Virus record (IMG/VR): IMGVR_UViG_3300029893_000001
Location: 328,329-392,328 of that record
Direction: 5' to 3' (one strand)
Length of the DNA: 64,000 nucleotides
The position numbers and the translations under genes were made by a program. The notes below the pieces were generated by a model. It did not search any database. It saw only the letters and a list, made by a program, of their open reading frames with translations, and was not told where the DNA came from. Shown here one piece after another: positions 28,899 to 59,258 of the stretch (positions are counted from its first letter, which is position 1; each line of letters begins with the position of its first letter).

Positions 28899-29162
28899 TT
28901 ACTCCGTCGCCACTGAACTCCTATACAAGTCGATCTTGTCCTGCAGAAACAACCAGAATTCCGGCGTGGTCCCGAGTGCCTTCGACAGCCGTAGCGCGGT
29001 CAGCGGTGTGATCGACTGATGGCCGTTGACAATTCGATTCACGGTCTCTGTCGTCATACCGATATGTTTCGCCAGCTTCCTCTGCGAAATGCCTGCAGGC
29101 TCCAAGAATTCCTTTCGCAGGACTTCACCAGGTAAAGTAGGCATTCTGTTTTTAGGAGTCAT
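28899..29162 (-). CDS. higA: HigA-family antitoxin (HTH), orphan
   Basis: PTLPGEVLRKEFLEP.GISQRKLA...IVNG..SITPLTALRLSKALGTTPEFWL.LQ is the HigA consensus; no HigB adjacent. Confidence 0.9.
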   Translation of the reverse strand: MTPKNRMPTLPGEVLRKEFLEPAGISQRKLAKHIGMTTETVNRIVNGHQSITPLTALRLSKALGTTPEFWLFLQDKIDLYRSSVATE

Positions 29163-33139: not shown

Positions 33140-33210
33140 GATTCACCATTCTTTCTGGGGCGCCGTGCCCCGTCGTTGTACCGACTAGTATTGTCAGGGT
33201 TCGGAAAACT

Positions 33211-33344: not shown

Positions 33345-34241
33345 TTCACTACTATCAGCCGGGTTCAAATCCCTCTTAAACGCGAGAAGGCCCGGGGCTT
33401 TTGCCCCGGGCCCCATCACCCGACCTTCCGAATCGGGGCGACGATGACTCGACTACGCAGCTCGCGCCGCTCTCGGAGCTTGCGGATCTGCAAATCGAGA
33501 AGCGCAATCGTGGCATCGAGCATTTCCCTTTCCTCGGGATCTTGCTCCCTCACACGCTTGCGCAGCGCCTCCGCTTTCTCACAGAGGAGTGCACGAATGA
33601 CATGATCGTTCATTATTCACCTCCCACCAACTACTATCGAGCGGGTTCAATTGCTATTCGGGAGTAGGGTCACGCGGAAATAGGAAAATGCCGACCAATT
33701 AATTTTGACCCATAAGTGGTAAAGTATGTAACCGCTCGTTCACACATTCTCACGCTTAAGTACGTATACGCTCGCAGCCATTGCGAGCTTGCTTGTACCC
33801 ACTGCGAAATAGCCTAATAAGGCATGTACGCTCGCAGCCATTGCGAGCGGGGCGGGGCGTTAAAAGGCTACGGGCCCCAGAGGGGCCCTATCTCCTCGCA
33901 GCCGTTGCGAGAAATGGTCCTAGTAGTCCATCCGTCCGCTCGGAATGGGACCCGAGCCGAGCAGGTAGGCCAGCGCCTCGACCCACGCCGCTCGTCCAGC
34001 GGCCAAGTGAGACCTCAGGACGAAAATGCTTCCCAACGCTCCGACTTGCAGATCGAGAGCAAGTCGAGCCTGGTGCTCGTGGTAGCGTGCCGAGCCGACC
34101 GCTAGAGCAGCACGAGCACACTGATCACCGAAATCTTTCTCCGTGGCCATCGTTGCCTCCTCGCCGATTATTATCAGCTGGGTTCAATTCGTGCGCGGTT
34201 AAATGCGTAACGGCTGCGAGGAATCTCGCAGCCGCTGCAAA

Positions 34242-34401
34242 CTCCCAAAGGGAAACTGGAATCCGTACTCAATCACTTGTCCGACTTCGTTGTCGGGGTG
34301 TCTTTCGGGACCACACGATTCCCGCTTCTACGCCGAAGCTCCACGAAAGATCGTATGTTTCCAGCGTCCCTTTGGGAGCCCGATTTTTCGGTGAATCGGG
34401 C
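34242..34401 (-). ncRNA. Candidate structured RNA
   Basis: Perfect 12-bp stem 34242-34253/34367-34378 enclosing several short helices, plus an 8-bp hairpin 34378-34401; intergenic. Confidence 0.5.
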
Positions 34402-34428
34402 GAACCGTTCTCGCAGCCGTTGCGAGAA

Positions 34429-34767
34429 TCAGGCGGCCGTGCCGAGCACCTTGCCCATCGACAGGAACCGGCCCTTCTCCCCGCGGAGCCTCAGGCGCAG
34501 ATCCCCGCTCTCGTGGGCGTCCCGGATCTTGTCGCCGAGGCTCACCCGCACCCCCGCCTGCTTGCCCTGCTTCCTCAGGAACTCGCGGGCCTCCTCCGCC
34601 TCCTGCTGCTGCGCCTGCTGCCGCTCCTTGAACTGGCGGCGGGACTTGGCCTCGCGCTCCTTCGCCTTGCGCTCCTCGGAATCCTGCCAGAAGCGGCGCT
34701 TCACCTCCGCCGGGTCGAGGCGGCGGGTTCCGGGGACGAGCGTGGTGCGGGTCGCGTTCGTGGTCAT
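34429..34767 (-). CDS. Basic/coiled-coil hypothetical early protein
   Basis: AGGAGG RBS, promoter 34805-34820, strong GC3 bias. Confidence 0.75.
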   Translation of the reverse strand: MTTNATRTTLVPGTRRLDPAEVKRRFWQDSEERKAKEREAKSRRQFKERQQAQQQEAEEAREFLRKQGKQAGVRVSLGDKIRDAHESGDLRLRLRGEKGRFLSMGKVLGTAA

Positions 34768-34892
34768 GATTATTCCTCCTGGGCCGGAGCCCGTTGCCCC
34801 GACTAGTATCGGCCGGGTTCGGCCGACTAGGGAATTAAACGCGCAACGGCTGCGAGATTTCTCGCAGCCGTTGCTTGTGTAGAGTCAGTGGG

Positions 34893-35075
34893 TCAGGGGA
34901 TGCTGACCTTCGCCTCGACCGTCGCGGAGTCGAGATCGATGGCCTCGCGGCACGAATCCACGTCCACGATGTCATCGTTACCCACGAGCACATCCCACAC
35001 GAGAGATTCCGCCTGCTGGGGACTCTCGGCCGTGACTTTCACCGTCACGGTCACAGTGAACTCCTGATCTTCCAT
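34893..35075 (-). CDS. Small acidic protein in a direct-repeat-flanked cassette
   Basis: Promoter 35097-35112; flanked by 19-bp direct repeats 34870-34888 and 35109-35127. Confidence 0.65.
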   Translation of the reverse strand: MEDQEFTVTVTVKVTAESPQQAESLVWDVLVGNDDIVDVDSCREAIDLDSATVEAKVSIP

Positions 35076-35123
35076 TTTGCATTTCCCTCGCTAACTATTA
35101 TCCGCAGGGTTGCTTGTGTAGAG

Positions 35124-35402
35124 TCAGCCCAGGTCGAAGGGGTACTCCGAAGTGACGTCGCCCCACAGACGATCGTCGTCGCCGTAGTAGTGGTGCGTGG
35201 CCGTCTCCGGGATCACCGGATTCTCCCGGTCGTCGTTCCTGTAGACACAGAAGCGCTCCCCCGGGCAGCAGTCGCCCAGGAAAAGCATTCCCGCTCCCAT
35301 CAGGACGATCGTCTCGGCCGGCGTTCCCTGCGGGGCCACGAAATGCACCACGGTGACGTCGCGGTCGCTTTCGTAGCGCACGGAGTAGTCGTTGACGTTC
35401 AT
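35124..35402 (-). CDS. Acidic hypothetical protein, paralog of 48301-48564
   Basis: Shared YSVR...VLxGAGxL...CVY...YxDDD pattern; promoter 35425-35440. Confidence 0.7.
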   Translation of the reverse strand: MNVNDYSVRYESDRDVTVVHFVAPQGTPAETIVLMGAGMLFLGDCCPGERFCVYRNDDRENPVIPETATHHYYGDDDRLWGDVTSEYPFDLG

Positions 35403-36404
35403 TCGGCTTTCCTCCTCAGCGACTATTATCGTCGGGGTTCACGTCCGACACGAAAAGCGCGTTAAATGAAACAACGGCTGCGAGAAATCTCGCAGCCGTT
35501 GCGTGCCTTGGGAACTTTGGAACTACAGGACCACCCATCCCCAGAAGACGGCCCAGGCGATGAAGCGGATCGGCCAGCGGGTCCAGGAGTCATTCTGCCA
35601 GAGGCAGAGCAAAATCCAAGTGACCCCGAACGCCGGCCAGAGCGTATTGAACCACGGGATCACCTGGACGATTCCGCACCAGATCCAGTACGTCAGCAGG
35701 AAGCACGTGGAAATGTTGCAGAAGAACTCCACCCAATCCGAGATTTCCATCTCGTTGTGCGGGGTGTAGATCGTCCGGCCCGTCTCGTGGTCCCTGTAGA
35801 CCTTGTACGTGGCGCGGAGCGGGCGGATGCTCGGCTGGAGCCGGCGGATATTCTTCGGGTTGGGCATGGGTCGTCTCCTCGCTGACTATTATCAACAGGG
35901 TTCTCGCAGCCGTTGCGAGAAATTAAAGTAAGATGGCCCCGGGTTTCCCCGAGGCCCTCTTTTCATCCGAGCGGCTGACTGAGAGCCACCGCACGGCGTC
36001 GAGCGTGGATCGGATTGCTCTTCCAGAAGCGAGCCCAGAAATCGCGCTCCGCTTGCTTCGCCTCGTGCTCATTCCTGTACTGCAATTGAACGAGCAGATC
36101 GGCGTATTCCCCATCCCACTTGGGGTCGTACTCCAGCGACTCACGAACGAGCTGGAATCCCTCCGTTTCGACGACCGCCTCGGCCCGGAGCGCCCGGAGT
36201 CGGTACGGGACGAATCGGAGGAGCGCCTCCCGATAGTCAGCGTCGTTTGTGATGAATCGGCTCGCCTGTCGGAGCCAGTCGGCAGCCGACTGTTGCTCTT
36301 TCATGACTCGCCGATACAGCACCTCGGAGAACGGGATGATTTCTGCCATTCAACCTCCCTTCGCCGATTATTATCAGCAGGGTTCTGTGCGGCCGTGAAT
36401 GTCC

Positions 36405-36592
36405 TTAAAGCACGAAAAGGCCCTTGCTAGGGCCCTTTCGCGGGTCATTTCGGCAAAAGCTGACCAGGCTCGGAATACCAAGGCACGTGGTCGTGTACCT
36501 TGGTTAGCCTTGCCCCTTTTCGAGTCCATTATTGGTGGCTCGCCTTACGGGTGGGAGGGTGCAGCCCGGATGGAAACGGAACGAGAACACCA
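36405..36592 (-). ncRNA. Candidate structured RNA with its own promoter and terminal hairpin
   Basis: Promoter 36596-36611; no RBS; nested stems 36477-36486/36495-36504, 36466-36470/36506-36510 and 36443-36447/36461-36465. Confidence 0.45.
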
Positions 36593-37163
36593 TTTAGTAT
36601 CGCCAGGGTTCTCGCAGCGGCTGCGAATCCCTAAATCCCGATCCAGTAGTTGTCCAGGTCGCTCAGCTTCACGCTGGTGATCTCGGGATTGTGGTCCGGC
36701 AGACGTTGCTTGGCGAGTCGACGGACGTGAACATCGAACTCCTTTTTGTCCCTCGTTCGCGTCAGGACCGTGAATCTGTCCACCGCCGACTTCCCGTCGA
36801 CTTCGTAGCACAGTTCGATGAGATACTTCATTTTCCGCCTCCTCGCCGAATATTATTGGCAGGGTTCTCGCAGTGACGGCGAGAATTTAAATTGAGAAAG
36901 GCCCCTCGCGGGGCCCGTCTCAGTCGTCGCGGAGGCACGGGGTCGGTCCCCCGCAGAATCCGCAGCGCCCCGGATTGTGGTACGCTGAGAGCACGTGATT
37001 GTTGGCCACGTGCTCCGGCTCGAAATAGTCTTCGGTTTCCCGAACTTCCATTCCTTCCGGGGCTTGCTCGTCGTCGAGGAGACGCACGGCTCGTGCCGTG
37101 GTCTTGCCGGGGTTGGCAATGTAGTAGCGGATGGTCATGCCGAATATTATCGGCAGGGTTGAA

Positions 37164-37236
37164 TCGGACCGGTGGGATTCGAACCCACAACGTCCCGGTT
37201 ATGAGCCGGGGGCTCTAACCATTGAGCTACGGTCCG
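37164..37236 (-). tRNA. tRNA with CAT anticodon (Ile2-lysidine or Met), no encoded CCA
   Basis: CGGACCG-TAGCTCAATGGTTAGAGC-CCCCGG-CTCATAA-CCGGG-ACGTT-GTGGG-TTCGAAT-CCCAC-CGGTCCG-A; full cloverleaf. Confidence 0.95.
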
Positions 37237-38702
37237 ATGGTTTTCACTAGGTTACGTTTCGCGTTACTTTGTGCGAACGATTCAGGCCCAGATCCCAGGC
37301 GCCGAATCCGGTTGCTCCGGGATCGGGATGTATTGGTTTCCCACGAATCCCGCCGCCGCGTCCAAGGCGACCACACGGGGGAATGTCACCGCAGGGTGCG
37401 GCTCATCCTCCCAATAGGCTTCCCACGCAGCCAGAGCGAGATACTGCAAGAGCAGTTTTTCCATTATTCACCTCCTCGCCGTATCCATACGGGCTTGCAC
37501 CACTTTTCTCAATGACACGAGGCCTTGGGTCGCTGTCTTCCCACAAACGTATGGGTGCAACCCATACGTTTTCGCCTTTGGTGTACACGAGAATCAACCT
37601 TGGACAAATTGATCGGGTGTTCCGCAGTTCCACACCCTCAAGGGTGTGCCCCAACGGGTCGGCTCCTCGGTCCAGTCGAAGTGGATCCGGCGGGAGTTCC
37701 CCTTCCGAATCCAGAACTTCCCCCTCGCATCCTGAGGCCGACTCCACACGTCGGCCGAGACGTTCATCGAGTCCAGGAGATCGTTGACGATTCCGTGGAA
37801 ATCCACCCAATCCTGCCACTCCAGAAAGCGAGCCTTCGGCTTCTTGCGGGGCGGGAAAGTGACGACGCACTCTCCGGGGTGATTCCCGCAGTATTCCTTC
37901 GCGGTCACGAGGCGGACGCGCTTCAGAAGGATCGTCTGGCCATCGACGCACGATTCCACGTTGAAGCGACCGTCGGCCCGCACCTTCTTTTGAAGGGCTA
38001 CGTGGATTCGCTCGACGTCGCTGCCGTCGAGCACCTTGATTGAGTACGGCATGATTATTCCTCCGTGGGTTGGTCCAGCGAGCTTTAGTATCGGGAGGGT
38101 TCTCGCCGTGGCTGCGAGAATTAAACTGGAAACGGGCCCCGGGAAAACCCCGGAGCCCGTTTTCTAGAACTCGCCCTCGTCGTCGTCCACCGCGTCGAGT
38201 GCGTCTGGACGTCCGAGGCCGCCGTCGGGCCCATGAGGGTGGTACCTCTTTTCCTTGTGGATGTCCAGAAAGAAGAGCGCCTCTTGCAGCGAACGCACCC
38301 TCTTTGGATTCTTCGTCCGCACCATTTTTGGGTTCGTCAGGGAATCCTTCGAGACCCACTCCTCGACGAGAAAGAAAACCTCCGGGCACCCATCGAGAGG
38401 AGCCGAGGGCCCGGTAATATTCTCGATGACGGTCGAGATTCGGCCTCGCTCGTCCGAGAAAATCACCGTGGTCGGCTCGAAATCGGTGAGCTTTTCGATG
38501 ATTTCACTGTAGGTGAACTTTCGCATTTGTTCCCTTCTACCGACGGTATCGGTACTCCTCGTCCACCTCTTGCTGCGTGGGCTCCCTTCCGAGCCTCTTG
38601 CGCAGATCGTCGCGGGCCGCGTTCCACTTGCGCTCGTCCTCCGCCCTTTCGAGAGCGCAGGCCGAGCATCCCATCATCATGCACATGGTCGCCTCCCTCT
38701 GA

Positions 38703-38917
38703 GAGCGAGGCTCGGAGCCGGAATCCGAGATTAGTCTGTTTTCGCCTCTTGGCCTAGCTCCGCCTCCGTGCCTAAACCTACACGGCCAGCCTCTACACTA
38801 GGTTGCAGACGAATCCAGGGTCTAGCCGCTTTTGCCTTGGATGACTAGTCCTCGGCGCTTGCACCCACGGGGGCGTCACCCCTTGGGGTATCTGGATTCC
38901 GGCTCCGAGCCTCGCTC
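38703..38917 (-). ncRNA. Candidate 215-nt structured RNA closed by a perfect 24-bp stem
   Basis: 38703-38726 is the exact reverse complement of 38894-38917; starts 17 nt after promoter 38934-38949; multi-helix interior. Confidence 0.7.
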
Positions 38918-39023
38918 CTCGCCGTCGTGGTCTACTATCAGGAGGGTTCAACTCCTCTAATTAAACAGAGAAAGGGGCCTGTGGCCCTTCTCCCTGTTTT
39001 GGAATCTCGCAGTGGCGGCGAGT

Positions 39024-41505
39024 CTAGTAGGCCCGGCTCACCACCGGAAGCCCACGCAGTTCCTCGACTATTCCCTTGAAGGCGACCTCGACCTCGCCGG
39101 TGTCGGGCAGCTCGACCGTGCGATCGATTCCGTAGAGATCCTCCAGGAACTCCCGGAATCCAGGCGTGTCGCCGCGGAACGGCTTGTTGAGAAGCCACTC
39201 CGCGAACTCTTCTCGGCGATTCCAATCCAGATCCTTGGCGACCTGCGTACCGATTGCCACCCCGAGGATACAATATCCTCGGACATCCCAACGATCGATG
39301 AACGACCTCGCGCTGCTGTCGCTCGAAAAGACTCGACACGAGTAGTGCACGTGCCAGTAGCCCCACTTCGCCGCCGGCTCGCTCTCCCTCACGTCGTCCA
39401 TGGAGGCGTAGGAACCCATTTCCGGGCCCCACCCATCCGACGACGGCATCGCCCTGACGAACGTATGGGCACTGTCGTAGCGATTTCGGATGAAGCTGCC
39501 GTCCGGCATCTTGAAGGCGTTGATCTGGTGGCAGTGCGGGTGCTTGAGATCCTCCTCCAGCGACTGCTTTGCGCTCTCGACGCTGCGCTCGCAAAAGAAC
39601 CTCCACGAGAGCACCGCGCTGATGAGCCGCTGCCAGACCTTGTGAGAAATCTTGTTGTTCATTGTTCTGCCCTCCTCGCTCTAACTATTATCGTCGTCGA
39701 CTACGATCCGATGCTCCCCATTCGCGGCGCATGCTGAATCACGTAGGAGACGCCGGTCAAAACCCAGCCAGCGGGAGTGTGGCCGTAGATGTTCACGCAG
39801 AACGTGAACACCAACACGGCGACGATGACGTACCACCTCTTGAGGGTTTCCACGATTGATTGACCTCCTCTCGCCGAACTATTATCGACGGGGTTCGCCG
39901 TCATATCGAGAACGACGAAATGCCCTCCGGGACTTACCGGAGGGCATTTCGTCAGGATTCCACGATCTTGCCGGCGTCGAGATCCACGAAACCGATGTGG
40001 ACGTACTTCCAGCCCGTGCTTCCAATGAGCGTGGGCGAATCCGGGAGACGCTCCGGAGCCTCGGCGAACGTGCAGCCCTCTCCGACGAGCAGGAACGCCA
40101 AGTGGCCGAATCCAGAGGAATCCACCGCCGCGTTTTGGTAGGCTGCCCAGCGAGTTCGCTCGCGCTGTCGAGCGCGCATTTGGCTCAGGACTTCCTCGTC
40201 GATTTGGAGATCATTGGTCGTCATCATGTCCCTCAGTACAGGTTCACGTAGACGCTATCGCCCACGATTTCCATCGCGTCCCGGACCTTTTGGGCCGCGT
40301 TCATTTCCTCGACTTCGCAGCGATCCCACGTCGCTCTCTGGTCGAGCACGTCGCGGAGAGCAGCCGGCGTGACGAGCACCACTTCGGTGTCGCCCCAGGT
40401 GAACGCGTTGGTGATGAGTTCCGAGACGATCTCGTATTCCTCTTCGGAGAGGAACTCCGAGAGCGTGATGAACTGGCACTCGAAAAGCGTCGGTCGCTTC
40501 ATGGCCTCCTTTCGGTCGCAGTCTTCGCAGTTGCCTGGACCGCGAAACTCGAAGACAGTCGGACTGATTTCCTGGCCACACGTCTTGCAATGATATTCGG
40601 CCATGTTTTTCTCCTCGCCTATTATTATCGACGGGGTTCGTGGTAACGACAAACGCAGAATAGGCCCCGAGTTTCCCCGGAGCCTATCTCTCTCACTTGT
40701 TCCTGAAGTACGTCTCGTACCCGATGTCCTTGGTGGACATCAGATTGTGCTTGAGATTCATGGACTCGCCGCTGAGCATGCGGCGCATTTCCTTCTCGCT
40801 GACGAAATCCACCCACTTCTCGTCGTGTTCGGGCCGAATCATGTGGTAGTTCTCGGGGTGAGAGCCCGTCGAATCGTAGTCGGTCCACTTCATGATCTGT
40901 TGCGTGGTCCATCCGACCGCCGGCATTCCGGTCATGTCGTAGCACCCGCGATTGACCAATTCGGTGGCCACCACTTCGTGCCCTTCGATGACCAGCTTGA
41001 CGATCGGCCAGTCCTCGGGATCGAGAACGTTGTCGCTGAGTCGGGCGTAGAGAATCGGCTTTCGCATCTTACCTCCTCGTTAAACGCGAAAAGGCCCCTT
41101 TCGGGGCCTCTGCTATTCCTCGGGAGCAAGTAGCAGCATGGTTTCGGCGGCGTGAGTCAGCGCACCCCACTGGAGTGCTTCCTCCTCGCACACCGCCTTG
41201 TACGCGCGTTGAAGTACACGCAGAAGCACACGCTGCTCGAATTGAATCCGAGCCTCGCCGATCATTTCGTCGAGGGGCGGGCCCTCGTCGTTGTAGTAGG
41301 CGATGCACGCCGGCTTCATCTGCGGGAACGTCTCGCAGTACAGCCAGTCGAGCACGCTCTTGTATTCGTCTTCCCTCGGAGGGGCGATCTTTCGCAGCGC
41401 CTTGGCGTGTTTGCTCGTGCGGAGCCACGCCTCGACCTCCGGGAAGAGGCTCGACGTGAGAGGCCCTCGAACGACGCAAACGCACACCATCTGGAGAGCA
41501 CTCAT
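39024..41505 (-). other. Early-region hypothetical ORFs
   Basis: 39024-39662, 39952-40227, 40233-40604, 40693-41067 and 41113-41505, mostly with clear GGAGG/GAGG RBS. Confidence 0.7.
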
Positions 41506-41531
41506 TATTCACCTCCTCGCCATTATTGAAT

Positions 41532-41604
41532 TGACCCCAACGGGATTTGAACCCGTGTTCTCGCCGTGAAAGGGCGGCGTCCTAGGCCACTAGACGATGG
41601 GGCC
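41532..41604 (-). tRNA. tRNA-Glu (TTC), no encoded CCA
   Basis: GGCCCCA-TC-GTCTAGTGGCCTAGGAC-G-CCGCC-CTTTCAC-GGCGA-GAAC-ACGGG-TTCAAAT-CCCGT-TGGGGTC-A; own promoter 41620-41635. Confidence 0.95.
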
Positions 41605-41882
41605 GTGTCCTCGCCGATTACTATCGGCGGGGTTCACTTCTTTCCGTGGGTGGACTCCCACCATTTCAGATACTCGTAATCCTTTCGGTCGAGCATCCGA
41701 TAATAGGACTCGGGGTCCGCGTCGAGTTGGTATTCATTCTCAGCGGCGTTTTGGTCGACGCCAGGAAATGTCTCCTCGTACCTGACTCGTCGATTTTTCT
41801 TACGCTGTTTCTGCTGTCGTCGCCGTCGCATGGGATATTATTCCTCGGGTTAACGCCGAATAGGCCCCGAAAGGCCATCGGC

Positions 41883-42830
41883 AGAAGCGAATCGCAGTGG
41901 GGAGGCCTACAGAGGCGGATAAAGGCAAACCAATACCCGGAACCCTCGGTTCCGACGGGATTCGAACCCGCATCACCGCCGCACCTGGTGCCACAGGACG
42001 CCCACTAGACAGCTCCGCGTTGGCACTCACGGAACGTTCATCGTAGGTCCCTGTAAGCCGCCCCACTGCGATTCGCTTCTTGGTTATTGTTTCCGCAGAT
42101 TCAGTTTCCTCCGCCCTGCGCTGCGGCTCAATCTGAGTGACCATGAGAAGGGAGTGCAGTATTCGTTAGCCTCGTTGGAGATAGTGTGCCCTTTGACTGC
42201 CGAGGGTGCAATAGCAATCTGCACCTAAACATAGGCCCGGCAATCTACAGACGATAGTCCAGCGAAGCACCGAACAATGCGTGTAACCTACGCGATGGTC
42301 AAACAATCGAGATGAGTACGAAAGGGAGTTAATTGGCGAGTCAAGGCGTCCTCCTAACGAGACTCTTTTGGGCCAGCTTTCGCTTTTAAGTGGCGTGGAG
42401 GTACGACACAATCTGCAACGTCCAGTAGCAGAAGCCCTGCCCTTGTACTCAGAACATTATCCAGCATATGCTGGAAGCGAATGGCTATGTTCCTTCGCCA
42501 CCCGTTCCCCTTGAGCCGCCTTTAGCGGACGCTCATTGGTCCTATCGGAAGCCTAGGCACATCTTGCCCAAGATTCCAATAGTATCAATTCAATCTCCGA
42601 GCGGTCCAGCCAGGGGGACCGATCCCTGCCACGAACTTAGCGGCGGCGCGTCATTCGTGGCTATATAGTCTCGAAGTGGTTACGACTCTTGCCCGACAAG
42701 TGTCGCAGCAATCAACTGGTCCAGGGGAAGGATTCAGTTGAGTAGGTATGCTTAGTTGCTTCTTGGCGGGTTTCCTACTAAACCCAGCCAGTCATAAGCT
42801 GTAGAACAGGAGAATCATTTCCAGTCCTCC
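41883..42830 (-). ncRNA. Candidate large (about 950 nt) structured RNA with a 3' circularly permuted tRNA-like module
   Basis: Largest gap without a credible ORF; many hairpins; 20-bp perfect stem 41883-41902/42061-42080; canonical T arm GCGGG-TTCGAAT-CCCGT at 41955-41971; 5' boundary uncertain. Confidence 0.7.
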
Positions 42831-42877
42831 GGCTGTGGGATTCATTAAACGCGAAGAGGGGCCCGAAGGCCCCTCTT

Positions 42878-43432
42878 CTATGCGTCCACCATCGCCCGAC
42901 GGCTCCAGTAGAGGATTGCCTTGGCGAAATCCTCCGCCGAATAGGTGGCCGGCGTTCCTCCGGGGAGACCCAGGAAGTTGCGGGCCATCGCCATCGGAGT
43001 CTGGGGCTCCGGCTCCTCGGTGGGGCGGGCGTTGATCGAGACGATCTCCCACTCGCATTCCGTCGAGGCGTCGTTGCCGAGAACGTCGTGCCTGTAGAGC
43101 ACGATCTCGACGACCTTCGCGGGAGCCTTCTCGCCCTTCGCACGCACCTCGATGTAGGGCTCCTCGCCCTCTCGCCGCGCCGAGAACGTCGCCCGGAGCG
43201 TCGTCTTCGGAGTGACCTCGATGACGCCACACTTGAAGTAGTGCGCCTGACTCTCGGTCATCGGGATGAGCAGAACGCCGTCGCGGTAGCCCGGCTTCGC
43301 CTCGGAGAACTGCTGCTCGACGAAAGCGATGAGCACATCCCACTTCGCATCGTGGGTGGCGATGAAGTGTGAGAAGGGGCTCTCCGGCGTCTGGCGACGC
43401 ACGAAGTCATTGATTCCGATGAGGTTACCCAT
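42878..43432 (-). CDS. DUF3228-like protein
   Basis: FVRRQ..., Y/FxARRxxExP, IVLYRHDVL, WEIVSI, EPQTPMAMARNFLG..GG..Y...ILYWS pattern; promoter 43466-43481. Confidence 0.7.
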   Translation of the reverse strand: MGNLIGINDFVRRQTPESPFSHFIATHDAKWDVLIAFVEQQFSEAKPGYRDGVLLIPMTESQAHYFKCGVIEVTPKTTLRATFSARREGEEPYIEVRAKGEKAPAKVVEIVLYRHDVLGNDASTECEWEIVSINARPTEEPEPQTPMAMARNFLGLPGGTPATYSAEDFAKAILYWSRRAMVDA

Positions 43433-44280
43433 GATTGATTCGGCCTCCCTTTGCCTCGCCAAACTACTATCGATTGGGTTCAGTCCCTCTCGATCGCGGA
43501 GAAGTCTCCCAGGTTCCACGTGGTGTGAGTGGGCTGCATGATGCCGAGAACCTGAGTTCCGTAGTTCTTCTCGTAATCCCAGGTGTTGAAGTCGCCCCGC
43601 GACTGAGCGTAGGCAGCGATGACAGCCTCTCGTGGAGAGCACGAAAACGTCTGCTCGTGGCAGGTGGCGAGGTTGAGGACAGTGGTGAACATGATTGATT
43701 TCCTCCTCTCATTAAACGCGAGAAGGGGCCCGAAGGCCCCGTTCTTAGTGACTCCAGGAGCGACGCACACCCTTCGAGAGGCGGCGAATCATTCGCTCCT
43801 CCTGAGCGATGACCTTCCTGGCGACCGGATTGAAATCGCGCAGGTCATCGCGCGTTGGGTAGATCCGGTCGATGTCCAGTCCGAATCCCCTACCGCTGTG
43901 ATGGCTGAAGAGACTTACATGACCAGGAAAAGCCATCGTCTCGATGTAGTGTCCAATCACGACTGTCGAGATCGTGACGTGCCGGGTCTTGCACCACGTG
44001 CGGTACTCCGGACGAAAGAGATCCCAGGACTTCGGGATGCGCCGTCCGTACCACCGGATGATCGGCTGCTTGAAGACGACCTTCGTGACCCTCTGGACCT
44101 GACCGTCCTTGTGGGTGATGATCTCGGTGGAGCGCCGGAGAGCGCCGGAGAATGTTGCTCATGATTGATTGCCTCCTCTGATTGATTGCCTCCTCGCTCA
44201 ACTATTATCGGCGGGGTTCAGCGTTCTCTTAAACGCGAGAAGGGGCCCGAAGGCCCCTCGTACGCAGCTCACTTAGTGAG

Positions 44281-44904
44281 CTAGTTGGTCTCCGAAGGAG
44301 GCGGCAGGACAGCCGATGGCCTTCGGGGAGACGCCCACTTTTCCGCGGCCTGTTCGATGTTGCCATCCGTCAGGGTGCCGACTTCCATCCTGATGAAGTG
44401 CATCGCCTCATTTCGGTAACGATCTGCTTCGAGCGAATCGCAGAAGACCTCGACGAGATTCTTCGCGTCGGCCAGACCGAGGCCGTGCATCTCGCGGGCC
44501 TTCTTGATGGCGGGGATCTTCCTGCCAGTGTTGTTCGGACCTCCGACCACCGCCATGAACTTCGCGGCGGGATCGAGATCCTTGACGGGGAAGGGGCACT
44601 GCTTTCCGATGTTGCCTCGGATGCGATCGTTGTCGTACTTGAGGCGACCGTTCTCCTGTCGGAGCGTCGCGATCTCTTCGCGCTGAAGAGCCACGGTCTT
44701 GTTCATGTGAGACCACTCACAGACCATCGCCGACGCATCGGCGTGGATCGACTCCAAGAGCGACGAGGCGCCGAGCACCATCGCATAGATGGGCACCAAC
44801 ACCAGGTTGAAGGGCTCGTCCTCGACCTGTTCCTTGAGACGGTCCGCGGCGTCTCGGACCATCGTCGTCAGGATCTCCAGGTTCTTCACGAACGTGTCGT
44901 ACAT
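44281..44904 (-). CDS. Protein containing a ribosomal bL12 (L7/L12) C-terminal-like domain
   Basis: RKIPAIKKAREMHGLGLADAKNLVE versus the bL12 consensus KIxVIKxVRxxTGLGLKEAKxLVE; N-terminal coiled coil. Confidence 0.75.
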   Translation of the reverse strand: MYDTFVKNLEILTTMVRDAADRLKEQVEDEPFNLVLVPIYAMVLGASSLLESIHADASAMVCEWSHMNKTVALQREEIATLRQENGRLKYDNDRIRGNIGKQCPFPVKDLDPAAKFMAVVGGPNNTGRKIPAIKKAREMHGLGLADAKNLVEVFCDSLEADRYRNEAMHFIRMEVGTLTDGNIEQAAEKWASPRRPSAVLPPPSETN

Positions 44905-44995
44905 TACCAATTCCTCCGGGCCAGAAGTTGGCACTTAGTATCGCCAGGGTCCAACCCCTTAAGCAAGAAAAGGGCGGCCCCGAAGGACCGCCAAT

Positions 44996-47900
44996 TCATC
45001 GGTACATGTTGGCTTCCTGATGGGAAGCCCAATCGTCGTTGACGATCTCGGCGAGTTTGCGAGCAACCTGCTCACCGTACTTCGAGATCCACTCTTGGAG
45101 TTGTTCCCCCGAGAGCGGCTTGATCTCGTATCCGACCATCGGGTCGGAAGCCGGAAGAGCAGGGAAAACCTGCGGCGGGTCCGAGAAGGCAAACTTGGTG
45201 GGTTGCATCGTCTCGACGACGGTGGCGATCACGAGATATTCCACTCCATCCAGAGTGAACTCGTGCTCCCTTTCGGGATAGGTGAAGCTCTTGTGATTCA
45301 CTCGCCCTCCTTCTGGTTGAGCCGACTGAGACACGTCTCGCAGATGATGACTTCGCCACGCGTCATCATGCGACCACCGCAGTCTCCCCGCGGATTGTTG
45401 TTCCAATTCACGCAGTCATCCAGAGCGTACAGGCCGGTGACTTCGACAACCTCCGGAGAGGCGTCGCGGTGGTCGTAGATGCCCAGCTCCCACCGACCGT
45501 CGGCCATCTTCTGACCGGTGGTGTTGGACCAGTTTTCTCCGACGCACCACGGCTCCGGGAGAAGTTCCTCGACCTTCGTCGGATCGTTCGGACAGATGAT
45601 GAGGCGCTCGTCGAGATTGATCTCCGTTCGATTCGCCACGTCCAGCATGGACTTGAGCCACTCCCGAGTCTGGCGTCGAGCAGGAATGGTGTTTCGTCCC
45701 CGAAGAGAAGTCTCCGAGAACAAATCCCACTTGCTCAGGTCAGCGAACTCGCTGGGGAAGACGTAGCATTGTCCCAGAGGGGTGATCAGCGCCTCCGCAT
45801 GCTTGACCAGGAAGTCGATTCCCGGATTCATCGGATCGAGATCCTTCGAGAGATCCCAAAAGGGCGCCCTCTCCGAGACGATGATGAACAGCTCGCCGGC
45901 CGGAAGGCACGTACGAATCTGTTGGATGTTGGCTCCTGAGAGGTCACCCCACCCCAGCTTCTCGCCGAGACGATTGTACCAGGATGCATTGTGGAAGAGA
46001 TCGTCCATGAGGCACTGACCCTCACGGATGATCTGTTGGAGCGGCTGTGCGCTCTCGTGGACGGACGCCTTGAACTCCTGGACCCACTGGCCGTCCCTCT
46101 GGATGGTCCGATAGTCGAACATCCCGTAGAGGAGAAGCGAGCGAACGAGGTTTGCCATGATCATTTCCTCCGGTTGTGGTCGTCGCTCTGTGTAGTATCG
46201 GCCGGGTTGACGCCCCCTCGACTACGTTCCCAATTCCCAACGGGTTCAATGTCGTAATCTACAAACACACGACTCGCAATCTCAGCAGCCTTGGTCATTC
46301 CATGAGATCGTAAGGTATCTGCAATCTTGCCTCTCATGTATGTCTGGCCCTGATGAAATCGCTTTTTCGTGAGCCTCTTTTCGACGTGTGCGTGGTGCTG
46401 CCGGTTGATCTGAAACCTTCTCCAGAGATTGCCGGAGGTATTTTTGAGGCGATCTATTTCCTCGATCAGCTCCATCACAACGAGATTGTCCGTGGCCTCA
46501 GCTTCATCCCAAAGCTGGTCGATTCTCTCGTTTGTCAGATGACTCATTGAAAATCTCCAAGGAGACCTTAAACGCGGAAAGGGGCCCCGGTTTCCCGGAG
46601 CCCCTTTCTTACGCGGCCTGAGAGACCGACGGCGCCTGCTTCCCGGGCACCGCCTTGAACTTGAGGAAGCGCGCATCGTCGAACGACTTGAACTGCTCGG
46701 CGTCGTTGAGCTTCATGCTCAGGTAGTTGAGGCGGTGCCAGTTGACGAACGCCTCGTGGTACTTCTTCTCGGCGGCGGCCCGCATCGAGGTACCCTCCGG
46801 GTAGCGGTTCATCGTCTCGCAGTGCTTGTTCGCCTCCGCGCCCCAGTAGTCACGGGCGGGCCGCAGGAAGACCATCATCACCTTGATGATGGCGCTCGCC
46901 GGCAGCACCTTGAGACGGTCGGCGATCGAAAGAACCTGCTCCTTGATGGTCATGATCAATACTCCCGGTTAGGGCGGCGTCATTGCCTCATAGTCTAGTA
47001 TCGGCAGGGTTCACTGATTCTTGGAAGTACGTTTCTCGTAGGCTGCACGTTGCTGAGGTGTCATTGCAGCCTCGGCTCTCGCCAATGCTTCTTCGAAAGA
47101 ATGGTCAGAGCGGCCCTTCTCAGTAGTAAGTCGGGCCCCACGCTTTCCGGTGCGGTGGTACCCCACCGAATATCCGTACACCTCGCCCTCTGGAGAGACC
47201 CATCCATCCGGCCCAGGCTTTTCCGTGCCTGTGAAGCGTCGCAATACGTACGCAAATCCACGAGGGCCCCATTGAAGCTGGGCTATTTCTTGTGCTTCGG
47301 CTTCAGTCATAGTGTCCAAACGAGAAATGCCCGCTGACCGCGGGCATTTCTCAGAGGCGACCCACCTTGGGCCGACGGGAGAGCACGACTCGGCGGGGTC
47401 GCCACCGACTGTTGCAGAGACAAGAGAGGGTGCAGTATCCTTCTCGCGAGAACATTTCGCTGTATCTCGCGACTCGGTTTTTGCACCCCCAGCAGCGAGG
47501 TAGCGATTTGTTTCGCAGCGCTCGCTGCCTCTCTAGAACGTTGGTGAGGTCCATGGTCAGCTCTTGGGGCGACGCACCTTCTTCGCGCGGCCCTTGATCT
47601 TGCCGAGGTCCAGCCCGATCTCGAAGTCGTCGGGCGTCATCGTGACGGTGCGGCCGGCGACGTACACGCCGTCCTCCTTCTTCGTGTCCTCCACGAAGAC
47701 GAACGTCCTCGTGCGCTTCCCCTTCACGCCCTGGTAGCGGAACGTACCACGGATCTGCTTCGGCTTCTCGCCGAACTTGAGGAGGCGCTTCTTCTCCTCA
47801 TCCGTGAGGGGCACGCCGTTGAACTTGTAGGGCTCGGTGCGAATGGGCTGGAGCATGATTATTCCTCCCGGCTGGGGTTGTCTCAACTACTATCAGCCGG

Positions 47901-58013: not shown

Positions 58014-58343
58014 CTAGAACCCGACCGCCAGCTTCTCGAACAGCGGCTCCGTCAGGAAGTACGAACCGGGAGCGTTCTCGTCCTCGAACACCTCGCGGCT
58101 GTTCAGCTCGACGTTGCTCACCTTCTCCAGGAACTTCTGGATCTTCTTCTTGGGGAGCCCTGTCTCCTCGGCGATCTCCGCCGCCGAGAGCGAGTCGCCG
58201 CCGGCATCCCGAAGGCACTCGATGATGCGCTCCTTGCTGGAGAGCGTGCGGGTGATGAGTTGCGGCGCGTCCTCGCTCGCCTCGTCCGTCTCGTAGCGCT
58301 CCGGGATTTCGCTGCCGCTCGACATGTGGGAGAGATTCAGCAT
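58014..58343 (-). CDS. Winged-helix/HTH DNA-binding protein
   Basis: RIIECLRDAGGDSLSAAEIAEETGLPKKKIQKFLEK; AAGGAG RBS; promoter 58388-58403. Confidence 0.65.
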   Translation of the reverse strand: MLNLSHMSSGSEIPERYETDEASEDAPQLITRTLSSKERIIECLRDAGGDSLSAAEIAEETGLPKKKIQKFLEKVSNVELNSREVFEDENAPGSYFLTEPLFEKLAVGF

Positions 58344-59258
58344 TGATTACTTCTCCTTCGGCGACCCTTTGCCGCCTTGTGCTGACTACTATCGGCGGGG
58401 TTCACGCTTCTACGGAGAAGCGGCGCGGCGAGCGTCGTGGAGCTTCGAGAGCAGTTCCTTGAATTGCCGACGCTTGGTTTCTGGAGTGGCTCCTCCGAGC
58501 ACTTTTGTGTCCTCGTTAATGCGCTCCATATGTTCGATCAGGAGCAACAGCTCTTCTAGGGAAAGCTCTAGATAGACCATCTCACACCACTTGCGTCTTG
58601 TCGAGATCGAGTTCTGACGCTACCAGATCGTAGGTGTCGGTGGGTAGAGCGGGTCCTCCACCGTCGGCAAGAATCGCATTGACCTTATCGAAGGCTTCTT
58701 GGATTCGTCGTTCAGAGTTGGGGGCAAAGTGCTGCTCTGCTAGAGCGCAGTGGAGACACTTGCGATCGCAGGAGGCGCACACTCGACGCACGACCTTAGC
58801 AGCCTCCCGGTACCCAACGCTCCTATCCTCTCGAATCCTGTTCATCTCGGCAAGTGCCTTGGCTCTTCCGTGCTCATAGAAGAACTTACGGTCGGAAAGA
58901 AGACGATCTTCGTAATCCTTCCTTTGCCTTTCGAGCACCACTTCCCACATCTTACGATTCCTCGTGATGTAGAACATCGCGATCGCGGAGAGTATCCCCA
59001 GCAGAGCAAGCACTCCCAGGGTACTTCCAGTAACAACCTCCACCACTGTTTCCATAACGGATTCATCCTTTCAGATGAGATCTCTTTCGATTCCGTACTC
59101 GGCGACTCTGACTCCACGAATGCGTTTGGCCCTCTTCTCTAGAGCCTCTTCGAGTTCGTCGAGAATCGCCTCAGCCTTGCTCTTGCTCGGGGTCCGCAGG
59201 ATCTCCTTGATCGGATCTCCTGATTCATCGTAGGCAATGATATTGTAGGCCCACTTCA

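What the first reader, a model, noticed from the sequence alone, without database searches (positions are those of the whole stretch)
33771..39022. A 17-bp palindrome CTCGCA-N5-TGCGAG repeated 15 times within 5.3 kb only
Seen: all copies are intergenic and none was found outside 33.7-39.0 kb. Four (35903, 36611, 36867, 38102) share a base with the first G of the GAACCC promoter box, and three of these fill the gap between a TTTAA element and the promoter. Three head-to-head pairs (34204/34225, 34840/34861, 35468/35489) form larger hairpins that replace the usual GC hairpin before TTTAA. Inference: a binding site for a dimeric phage protein. Options are an operator or activator site for a subset of early promoters, a parS-like centromere cluster, or a recombination site. 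Tight clustering and copies away from promoters favour a structural DNA role.
Basis: partly seen in the sequence, partly recalled or inferred. Interest (0 to 1): 0.74.

Follow-up and report, generated by a model that had tools for sequence, protein, structure and literature searches.

The report
Repeated dyad in phage intergenic cassettes
A 17-21 bp palindrome recurs at the boundaries of about a dozen tiny early genes in one 5-kb stretch of a 392-kb subsurface phage; single copies most likely dock a protein beside promoters and doubled copies act as transcription stop hairpins, so it is a local variant of known phage regulatory cassettes, not a new kind of element.

Summary
The cluster is real, but only 5 copies match CTCGCA-N5-TGCGAG exactly. 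Eleven match with at most 1 mismatch. The count of 15 needs six half-degenerate members of three head-to-head pairs. The conserved core is CTCGC-N7-GCGAG, in full TTCTCGC-N7-GCGAGAA. All exact copies in the whole 392-kb phage genome lie in window 33771-39022, and all are intergenic.

The dyad is a sub-family of terminator-TTTAA-promoter cassettes. These cassettes separate single-ORFan transcription units in a GC-rich early block (31.9-50.7 kb).

- Four copies are fused in one register to the phage promoter box GAACCC-N4-GATAnTA. A fifth is fused to a degenerate box.
- Three pairs form 12-14 bp hairpins followed by TTTAA, which are predicted terminators.
- The remaining four copies lie in 3' UTRs or in a promoterless spacer.

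Arm cores are 97-98% identical between copies and centres 56-61%. That fits an operator for a dimeric DNA-binding protein, but no binder could be identified or tested.

I found no ParB, integrase, resolvase or RAYT gene and no host REP family, so the centromere, recombination-site and REP readings lose support. The closest analogues are T4-type PeSL cassettes and the 17-bp dyads of Cluster O mycobacteriophages. I rate it a new variant of a known kind, of moderate interest.

The parts
33771..33787 (.). Single dyad, exact match. It lies in a 312-nt spacer downstream of a terminator and about 120 nt from the next promoter. It sits inside a 22-nt repeat identical to the one at 33827-33848.
   Evidence: D6
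33831..33847 (.). Single dyad, exact match, 60 bp from the previous copy, just after the TTTTAA of a terminator.
33895..33911 (.). Single dyad, exact match. It lies in the 3' UTR, 9 nt after the stop codon of the 76-aa ORF (33920-34150, minus strand) and before a GC hairpin plus TTTTAA.
34204..34241 (-). Head-to-head pair (34204 and 34225). It forms a 12-bp stem with a 4-nt loop, followed by ATTTAA. Predicted terminator at the end of a structured 3' UTR.
   Evidence: D8; -25.1 kcal/mol
34410..34426 (.). Single dyad, exact match, full 21-bp form. It starts right after the stop codon of the 112-aa ORF and is fused to a degenerate box (GAACGG, no GATAnTA element).
34840..34877 (-). Head-to-head pair. 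It forms a 14-bp stem with a 4-nt loop, followed by GCGTTTAATT. It is the top-scoring terminator-like site of the region.
   Evidence: -29.8 kcal/mol
35468..35505 (-). Head-to-head pair. It forms a 14-bp stem with a 4-nt loop, followed by TTCATTTAA. Predicted terminator.
   Evidence: -27.3 kcal/mol
35901..35921 (.). Full 21-bp dyad (17-mer at 35903-35919) between TTTAA and the promoter box. It shares GAA with GAACCC.
35887..35903 (-). Promoter box GAACCC-N4-GATAATA of the 114-aa membrane ORF.
36611..36627 (.). Single dyad with 1 mismatch, 3 nt after the stop codon of the 66-aa ORF. It is fused to the promoter box (36595-36611) of a non-coding, structured transcript of about 190 nt.
36865..36885 (.). 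Full 21-bp dyad (17-mer at 36867-36883) between TTTAAA and the promoter box (36851-36867) of the 66-aa ORF.
38100..38120 (.). Full 21-bp dyad (17-mer at 38102-38118) between TTTAA and the promoter box (38086-38102) of the 152-aa ORF.
39006..39022 (.). Single dyad with 1 mismatch, 1 nt after the stop codon of the 212-aa ORFan and 17 nt before a GC hairpin with TTTAA.
   Evidence: -6.2 kcal/mol, no better than shuffles
34870..34888 (.). A 19-bp direct repeat, identical to 35109-35127. The two copies bracket the 60-aa ORF and its promoter. In the second copy the repeat runs straight into the promoter, which reads CAACCC.
   Evidence: (D20)
35109..35127 (.). Second copy of the 19-bp direct repeat.
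   Evidence: D20
28899..29162 (-). HigA-like HTH_3 protein (87 aa). It is the only clear Cro/C1-type HTH gene in the 392-kb genome. It is an untested candidate binder, not shown to belong to the system.

Best explanation
The copies are one lineage-specific family of a dyad. The core is CTCGC-N7-GCGAG and the full form is TTCTCGC-N7-GCGAGAA.

**Setting.** The dyad is built into composite terminator-TTTAA-promoter cassettes. These cassettes separate single-ORFan transcription units in the GC-rich early block of a 392-kb phage.

**Single dyads (inferred).** They are operators for a dimeric sequence-specific DNA-binding protein.
- At four promoters, plus one degenerate box, the site overlaps the upstream edge of the promoter box by 1-3 bp. 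A bound dimer would there occlude or contact the polymerase.
- At the copies just after stop codons and in the spacer, a bound dimer would act as a roadblock or insulator between units.

**Head-to-head fusions (predicted from sequence).** They are inverted duplications of the same 14 nt. They form long hairpins followed by TTTAA and act as intrinsic terminators.

**Spread (inferred).** The family spread locally by recombination or template switching between cassettes, as PeSL cassettes do in T4-type phages.

The binder is unknown. The HigA-like HTH_3 protein at 28899-29162 is the only recognisable candidate nearby.
For: - **Clustering.** All exact copies in the 392-kb genome lie in 5.3 kb.
- **Position.** All 15 copies are intergenic by two independent sets of gene calls.
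- **Register.** Only 4 of 62 promoter boxes carry the dyad, and all four carry it in the same register.
- **Conservation.** Arm cores are 97-98% identical between copies and centres 56-61%. The spacer length is fixed.
- **Weak hairpins.** Arm changes are uncompensated, and the single copies fold weakly, at -6 to -12 kcal/mol. The copy at 39006 is no better than shuffles.
- **Pairs.** They score as the best terminator-like sites of the region, at -25 to -30 kcal/mol, against -23.5 for a canonical GC hairpin here.
- **Cassette confinement.** Terminator-TTTAA-promoter cassettes occur only at 31.9-50.7 kb.
- **Recombination trace.** A 19-bp direct repeat brackets one ORF cassette.
- **Lineage-specific.** A relative that shares the promoter has no dyads in its 58-kb fragment, so the dyad is not part of the promoter itself.
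Against: - No binding protein was identified. The 14 ORFs of the cluster and 30 neighbouring ORFs have no DNA-binding family, apart from HigA-like and a weak winged helix at 58 kb.
- The outer arms of the pairs are degraded while the centre is kept. That fits descent and hairpin function better than binding of a dimer.
- Purifying selection on a hairpin would also keep the arms. The copies may be too young to show covariation.
- The left arm equals the start of the usual terminator tail (TTCTCGC). The dyad could therefore be a by-product of palindrome formation.
- No transcript data exist, so promoters, start sites and terminators are inferred from sequence only.
Confidence: 0.4

Rival explanations
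1. The dyad is a purely structural stem-loop of a PeSL-like cassette. It attenuates or terminates read-through and supplies short homology for cassette shuffling, with no dedicated binding protein.
For: - The pairs are clear terminator-like hairpins.
- The dyads sit at cassette borders in an ORFan block.
- A 19-bp direct repeat brackets one cassette.
- A hairpin-loop flip between sister assemblies shows that template switching at hairpins is ongoing.
- The left arm equals the canonical terminator tail.
- PeSL stem-loops also sit at variable places around promoters (PMC2839356).
Against: - Single dyads are weak hairpins without a T-run.
- Three of them lie after the terminator, where little RNA would be made.
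- The arms keep the same sequence in all copies while the centres diverge.
- Positions 6/12 and 7/11 pair in some copies and not in others.
- The indels seen between sister assemblies do not use these repeats.
Confidence: 0.3
2. The dyad works as an RNA hairpin read by an RNA-binding factor. The factor could be a boxB/nut-like antitermination signal, a processing site or a 3'-end stabiliser.
For: - Four copies lie in 3' UTRs directly after stop codons and ahead of terminators.
- The block is packed with terminators that a late read-through device could override.
- One pair stem contains a G-U pair that only works in the transcribed sense.
Against: - Three copies lie between terminator and promoter, and two lie in a promoterless spacer, so most would not be transcribed.
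- In the transcribed sense, positions 7/11 are an A-C mismatch in 5 of 9 copies.
- Loop sequences vary.
- No Rfam family matches.
Confidence: 0.1
3. The dyads are a parS-like centromere or another structural DNA array that loads a partition or condensing protein.
For: The sites are a tight cluster of palindromes. Three of them lie in a promoterless 260-bp stretch, spaced 60 and 64 bp apart. KorB of plasmid RK2 shows that one protein can serve partition and promoter control (my own knowledge, not tested here).
Against: - The genome has no ParB_N match and no RHH_1 match.
- The sites follow transcription-unit borders.
- The pairs are terminators.
Confidence: 0.04
4. The dyads are REP/REPIN-like or attC-like mobile or recombination sites, moved by a transposase or recombinase.
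For: The copies occur as intergenic singlets and inverted doublets after stop codons, like REP and REPIN elements. The array of small-ORF cassettes also recalls integron cassettes.
Against: - The phage has no Y1 transposase, tyrosine integrase or resolvase gene.
- No GTAG head and no GTTRRRY core are present.
- The exact 17-mer is not a repeat family in any of 185,579 species genomes. There were 79 hits, about the 70 I calculate for a random 17-mer in 596 Gb, and at most 3 per genome.
- The units are far shorter than REPINs.
Confidence: 0.06

Closest known systems
PeSL cassettes (promoter-early stem-loop) of T4-type phages (PMC2839356, PMC4122927)
   Same: Both are composite terminator/promoter modules in intergenic gaps of a hyperplastic block of ORFans. 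Both carry a conserved stem-loop at or beside the promoter. In both, each small gene is its own transcription unit and short repeats bracket gene cassettes.
   Different: The promoter here is GAACCC-N4-GATAnTA, not sigma-70-like, and has no AT-rich upstream region. The dyad is a specific 17-21 bp sequence rather than a G-run/C-run stem. It marks only about 12 cassettes in 5.3 kb. Single copies are weak hairpins. Recombination at the repeats is only hinted at, by one 19-bp direct repeat.
17-bp dyad repeats of Cluster O mycobacteriophages, TGTTCGG-N3-CCGAACA, more than 30 copies (PMC4351075)
   Same: Both have invariant inverted arms and a variable centre of fixed length, occur in many copies and are mostly intergenic. 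Both are predicted to bind a dimeric protein, and in both the function and the binder are unknown.
   Different: The Cluster O repeats are spread genome-wide, one third lie inside genes, and most are not at promoters. The repeats here are confined to 5.3 kb, all intergenic, four fused to promoters, and three doubled into terminators.
Stoperators of Cluster A mycobacteriophages (PMC9283540, PMC6550527)
   Same: Both are many repressor-type sites in short intergenic gaps near stop and start codons. Stoperators are thought to stop elongation as well as initiation.
   Different: Stoperators are asymmetric 13-14 bp sites with one orientation. They are bound by a monomeric immunity repressor of temperate phages. 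Here the site is a dyad, and no integrase gene or repressor was found.
KorB operator (OB) sites of plasmid RK2 (my own knowledge, not checked here)
   Same: Both are palindromic sites, some abutting the upstream promoter element and others far from any promoter, all bound by one protein.
   Different: KorB is a ParB-family protein, and no ParB_N gene exists here. The RK2 sites are plasmid-wide rather than clustered.

Membership tests
PeSL-type composite promoter/terminator cassette | A promoter and a stem-loop combined in one short intergenic module | tested here: met
   (D2, D5)
PeSL-type composite promoter/terminator cassette | A strong sigma-70-like early promoter with an AT-rich upstream region | tested here: not met
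   The promoter is GAACCC-N4-GATAnTA. The sigma-70 scan finds 4 weak sites against 1.9 expected, none at the dyads.
PeSL-type composite promoter/terminator cassette | Lies in a hyperplastic region and flanks ORFans | tested here: met
   The 14 ORFs have no Pfam or PHROG family. One ORF has no homologue at all. The 58-kb fragment of the relative has no dyads or cassettes. Sister assemblies differ by indels next door.
PeSL-type composite promoter/terminator cassette | The stem-loop terminates transcription | tested here: inconclusive
   The pairs are terminator-like by scan and by folding energy. Single copies are weak and lack a T-run. No RNA data exist.
PeSL-type composite promoter/terminator cassette | Indels and mini-circles arise by recombination between the modules | tested here: inconclusive
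   A 19-bp direct repeat brackets one ORF cassette. The two deletions in the 403.5-kb sister assembly have 3-5 nt junctions inside genes, not at dyads.
Operator of a dimeric DNA-binding regulator | Dyad symmetry with half-sites about one helical turn apart and a fixed spacer length | tested here: met
Operator of a dimeric DNA-binding regulator | Arm sequence conserved more than the spacer, without compensatory changes | tested here: met
   Arm cores are 97-98% identical and centres 56-61%. Arm changes are uncompensated.
Operator of a dimeric DNA-binding regulator | Fixed position relative to the promoter | tested here: met
   Four copies share the G of GAACCC and one abuts a degenerate box. 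Ten of the 15 do not abut a box.
Operator of a dimeric DNA-binding regulator | A cognate protein binds the site | not testable with these tools
   The complex job for two HigA-like chains plus DNA was not folded.
parS/ParB centromere | A ParB-family gene in the same replicon | tested here: not met
   No ParB_N match at E<=1, while the control genomes ring.
REP/REPIN elements | A RAYT (Y1 transposase) gene and a large copy family in the genome that carries them | tested here: not met
   The phage has no Y1_Tnp match. The exact 17-mer reaches at most 3 copies in any of 185,579 species genomes. The host itself is unknown.
Integron attC / tyrosine-recombinase site | An integrase gene, and RYYYAAC / GTTRRRY core sites | tested here: not met
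   No Phage_integrase or Resolvase match. The cores are absent from the aligned copies.
CRISPR repeat / solitary repeat unit | Regular repeat-spacer period, or identity to a CRISPR repeat | tested here: not met
   Spacings range from 21 to 1235 bp. The phage's own array has an unrelated 36-nt repeat.
Stoperators (Cluster A mycobacteriophages) | An asymmetric site in one orientation relative to transcription | tested here: not met
   The site is a dyad.

The most novel reading that the evidence does not exclude
A virulent huge phage uses a dyad-binding dimer as a stoperator-like insulator and timer. One protein would sit at the border of every cassette in an ORFan block that may hold host-takeover or anti-defence genes. 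It would shut promoters at four borders and block read-through at the others. The same sequence, palindromised by template switching, would also supply the block's terminators. In that case the dyad would be a self-renewing source of regulatory parts as well as an operator.
Probability: 0.15. Interest if true: 0.6.

Novelty: new variant of a known kind. Interest (0 to 1): 0.4.

Why it matters
Huge phages from uncultured hosts are almost unknown at the level of gene regulation. This window gives a readable grammar:
- a 17-nt promoter used 62 times on one strand;
- a terminator type (GC hairpin plus TTCTC..TTTAA);
- a dyad that marks one sub-block of early ORFans.

If the dyad is an operator, it defines a small regulon of early genes and gives bait for finding its regulator. 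If it is only a stem-loop linker, it extends the PeSL idea of cassette shuffling beyond T4-type phages, to an unrelated lineage with a different promoter. Either way the result is useful for annotation but not surprising to a specialist.

Tried and rejected
**Searches for relatives that carry the dyad**
- Exact 17-mer in IMG/VR: 7 single hits, judged chance.
- Region against GenBank phages: only the tRNA matches.
- Paired form in JGI metagenomes: 4 unrelated hairpins.
- Relatives of two cluster proteins in IMG/VR: none.
- Homologues of the 152-aa ORF exist in other phages, but their loci share neither the promoter nor the dyad.
- The 212-aa ORF has no homologue.
- The promoter 17-mer found one relative, a 58-kb fragment syntenic with genome 288-341.6 kb. 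It has six promoters and no dyads, and it stops short of the cluster.

**Population data**
- Contigs of four public runs were laid on the region. No variants appeared in the cluster, and contig breaks fell at the paired repeats.
- Sister assemblies are identical over the cluster.

**Search for a binder**
- Pfam and PHROGs found nothing for the cluster ORFs.
- The protein atlas gave no DNA-binding lead for three ORFs.
- The AlphaFold model of the 152-aa ORF is confident (pLDDT 88.5), but its only matches are weak ferredoxin-like folds, none below E 0.001.
- The complex job for the HigA-like dimer with the dyad was not folded and counts as no evidence.

**Ideas rejected**
- CRISPR mini-array: the spacing is irregular and the phage's own repeat is unrelated.
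- A general TTCTC-Nx-GAGAA signal: not enriched outside the cluster.
- ACGGC as a special loop: not enriched.
- Tandem 482-bp duplication: no homology beyond the modules.
- A link to a Sulfurimonadaceae element that shares the exact 17-mer: identity stops at 18-19 nt.
- Literature search for the motif: nothing relevant.


Full report
**Context**

The window is the last 64 kb of a single 392,328-bp IMG/VR virus record. CheckV rates it 100% complete and it is linear. The same DNA occurs in subsurface and rock metagenomes, and no RNA run holds it.

Nearly all genes run on the minus strand. A 17-nt box, GAACCC-N4-GATAnTA, occurs 54 times in strict form and 62 times in relaxed form, always on the minus strand and never on the plus strand. 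It sits upstream of Shine-Dalgarno sites and start codons. I treat it as the promoter, on sequence grounds only.

Pfam models found no T7-like or multisubunit RNA polymerase gene and one sigma-70 gene. The enzyme that reads the box is therefore unknown.

Window 32-48 kb is GC-richer than the rest, 57-64% against about 53%. A second signal is confined to 31.9-50.7 kb: a GC hairpin followed by TTCTC..TTTAA, placed 7-21 nt before the next promoter box. This block is a string of single-gene units, each with its own promoter and terminator. Their products have no Pfam or PHROG family.

**The observation**

- CTCGCA-N5-TGCGAG occurs exactly 5 times, against none in 100 shuffles.
- With one mismatch there are 11 copies, all between 33771 and 39022.
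- In the whole genome, all 5 exact copies and 6 of 9 one-mismatch copies lie there.
- All 15 are intergenic by my ORF calls and by independent JGI gene calls.

An alignment of the nine single copies shows that the invariant part is CTCGC-N7-GCGAG, with one further fixed base in the centre. Positions 6 and 12 vary. Four copies extend to a perfect 21-bp dyad, TTCTCGC-N7-GCGAGAA.

**Anatomy, read in the sense of transcription**

- *Fused to a promoter box.* Four dyads (35903, 36611, 36867, 38102) share the G of GAACCC. In the 21-bp form they overlap the box by three bases. Three of them exactly fill the 18-19 nt between TTTAA and the box. A fifth (34410) has the same junction with a degenerate box. 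Only these 4 of 62 promoters have it.
- *After stop codons.* 39006, 36611, 34410 and 33895 start 0-9 nt after a stop codon. 39006 and 33895 are then followed by a normal terminator.
- *In a spacer.* 33831 and 33771 lie in a 312-nt spacer after a terminator and carry an identical 22-nt repeat.
- *Pairs.* In the three pairs the same 14 nt occur twice in inverted order around a 4-nt loop. They give 12-14 bp stems of -25 to -30 kcal/mol followed by TTTAA, against -23.5 for a canonical hairpin here. Two of the three are the two best terminator-like sites in the scan. The outer arms of the pair members are degraded while the centre is kept.

**What the conservation says**

Between copies, the ten core arm positions are 97-98% identical and the seven central positions 56-61%. 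In the four promoter cassettes the non-functional stretches have also diverged (D2). The arms are therefore held as tightly as the promoter box.

The few arm changes are not compensated. Positions 6/12 and 7/11 pair in some copies and not in others. Single copies fold at only -6 to -12 kcal/mol, and one is no better than shuffles. The spacer length never changes.

This pattern is what a dimeric DNA-binding protein gives: two 5-7 bp half-sites with centres 12 bp apart. It is not proof. A young family of hairpins under purifying selection could look the same.

**Alternatives tested**

- *Centromere.* No ParB_N and no RHH_1 match.
- *Recombinase site.* No tyrosine integrase or resolvase match.
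- *REP element.* The phage has no Y1 transposase. A scan of 185,579 species genomes for the commonest 17-mer gave 79 single-copy loci. That is about the 70 I calculate for a random 17-mer in 596 Gb, and no genome has more than three.
- *Sulfurimonadaceae element.* Nine of those 79 hits fall in one multi-copy non-coding element of Sulfurimonadaceae and Helicobacteraceae MAGs. Identity to the phage stops at 18-19 nt, so I treat it as coincidence.
- *CRISPR.* The spacing is irregular. The phage's own array, outside the window, has an unrelated 36-nt repeat.
- *RNA family.* Rfam matches only the two tRNAs with confidence.

**Relatives and population**

No other phage in the collections carries the dyad. 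One IMG/VR fragment of 58 kb shares the promoter (six copies on one strand). It is 64-72% identical in nucleotides to genome 288-341.6 kb over the long syntenic matches. It has no dyads and no TTTAA cassettes, and it ends before the cluster. The dyad is thus not part of the promoter and is lineage-specific.

Two sister assemblies of the same phage are identical across the cluster. They differ nearby in two ways. Three linked substitutions at 33162-33166 flip the loop of a 5-bp hairpin into its reverse complement, which is a template-switch signature. Two deletions (40049-43331 and 43554-46045) have 3-5 nt junctions.

A 19-bp direct repeat brackets the 60-aa ORF and its promoter (34870 and 35109). 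The second copy runs directly into a promoter that reads CAACCC, as if a dyad flank had been joined to a box. The left arm of the dyad equals the first seven bases of the usual terminator tail. Together these points suggest that the family arose and spread by palindrome formation and recombination among cassettes.

**Mechanism I commit to**

Single dyads are operators for a dimeric protein (inferred, confidence about 0.4).

- If GATAnTA is a -10-type element, the site is centred near -31. That is a repressor-type position over the place where a -35 contact would fall.
- If transcription starts right after the box, as in T7-type promoters, the site is centred near -25.
- Copies after stop codons would act as roadblocks or insulators.

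The pairs are intrinsic terminators. This is predicted from sequence, and I consider it likely.

The binder is unknown. The only clear Cro/C1-type HTH gene in the 392 kb is a HigA-like protein 4.6 kb away. A weak winged-helix protein at 58 kb has a different dyad next to its own promoter box. That hints that dyads beside the box are a recurring design in this phage. The complex prediction was not run by the tool, so there is no evidence either way.

**Comparison with known systems**

The closest systems are:
- PeSL cassettes of T4-type phages (PMC2839356, PMC4122927);
- the unexplained 17-bp dyads of Cluster O mycobacteriophages (PMC4351075);
- stoperators (PMC9283540).

The element works like a PeSL sub-family with an operator-like stem. 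It is not a member, because the sigma-70-type promoter is absent. It is not a stoperator, because the site is a dyad. I class it as a new variant of a known kind.

**Limits**

There are no transcript data, no host and no relative that covers the region. Promoters, start sites and terminators are sequence inferences.

Noticed in passing
G000:C1:50409-50740 (outside the window): The phage carries a CRISPR array of five identical 36-nt repeats with unique 37-40 nt spacers. The repeat is unrelated to the dyad. I did not search for cas genes.
   Followed up: partly
window 36402-36594 (-): A transcript of about 190 nt with no credible ORF runs from a dyad-fused promoter to a GC hairpin with TTTAA. 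It folds at -76.5 kcal/mol (z -3.2) and matches no Rfam family.
   Followed up: partly
window 34196-34430 (-): The 3' UTR of the 112-aa ORF is strongly structured (z -7.3). It starts with a single dyad, holds a 12-bp long-range stem, and ends in a paired-dyad terminator.
   Followed up: partly
window 38684-38932 (-): The 249-nt leader of the 49-aa ORF is closed by a perfect 24-bp inverted repeat (38703-38726 and 38894-38917). The fold has z -5.3 and matches no Rfam family. The 49-aa product has a faint sigma-70 region 3-like stretch.
   Followed up: partly
window 33162, 33164, 33166: Sister assemblies differ by three linked substitutions that turn the loop of a GGGGC/GCCCC hairpin into its reverse complement (ACGGC to GCCGT). 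This is a template-switch signature. The loop equals the commonest dyad centre.
   Followed up: partly
window 40049-43331 and 43554-46045; also 27877: The 403.5-kb assembly from a sister sample lacks these two stretches. The junctions have 3-5 nt microhomology and lie inside genes. The same assembly has a 234-bp insertion at 27877. These could be real variants or assembly artefacts.
   Followed up: partly
whole genome; window examples 12640, 47012, 61986: A 17-nt promoter-like box, consensus GAACCCTGCCGATAnTA, occurs 62 times on the minus strand and never on the plus strand. A 58-kb IMG/VR relative shares it. Pfam models detected no phage RNA polymerase gene.
   Followed up: yes
window 58404-58421: A different dyad (7-bp arms, 4-bp centre) ends 1 nt before the promoter box upstream of the weak winged-helix gene 58014-58343. 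It may be that gene's own operator.
   Followed up: no
window 35872, 36354, 36836: Three promoter modules are spaced exactly 482 bp apart, twice in a row. The units between them share no significant similarity (z 2.3 and -0.1).
   Followed up: yes
L018, L028, L030, L038, L042, L046, L052, L053, L075: Sulfurimonadaceae and Helicobacteraceae MAGs hold a multi-copy non-coding element of about 350-450 nt. In the copy whose neighbouring genes I checked (L052) it is intergenic. It ends in two hairpins and a T-run. The second hairpin is identical to the commonest dyad 17-mer, and the first hairpin shows compensatory changes. It has no Rfam match.
   Followed up: partly
window 37137-37237 (-): The 3' end of tRNA-Met runs almost directly into a promoter box (CAACCC...GATAATA), which is followed 6 nt later by the start codon of the 72-aa ORF. 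That mRNA would be nearly leaderless.
   Followed up: no
window 37594-38052 (-): The 152-aa ORF behind one dyad promoter belongs to a family found in many unrelated phage contigs (42-66% identity). The family has an invariant YCGNHPG..C and LEW.DW motif. The model is confident (pLDDT 88.5) but has only weak ferredoxin-like matches, and the function is unknown.
   Followed up: partly
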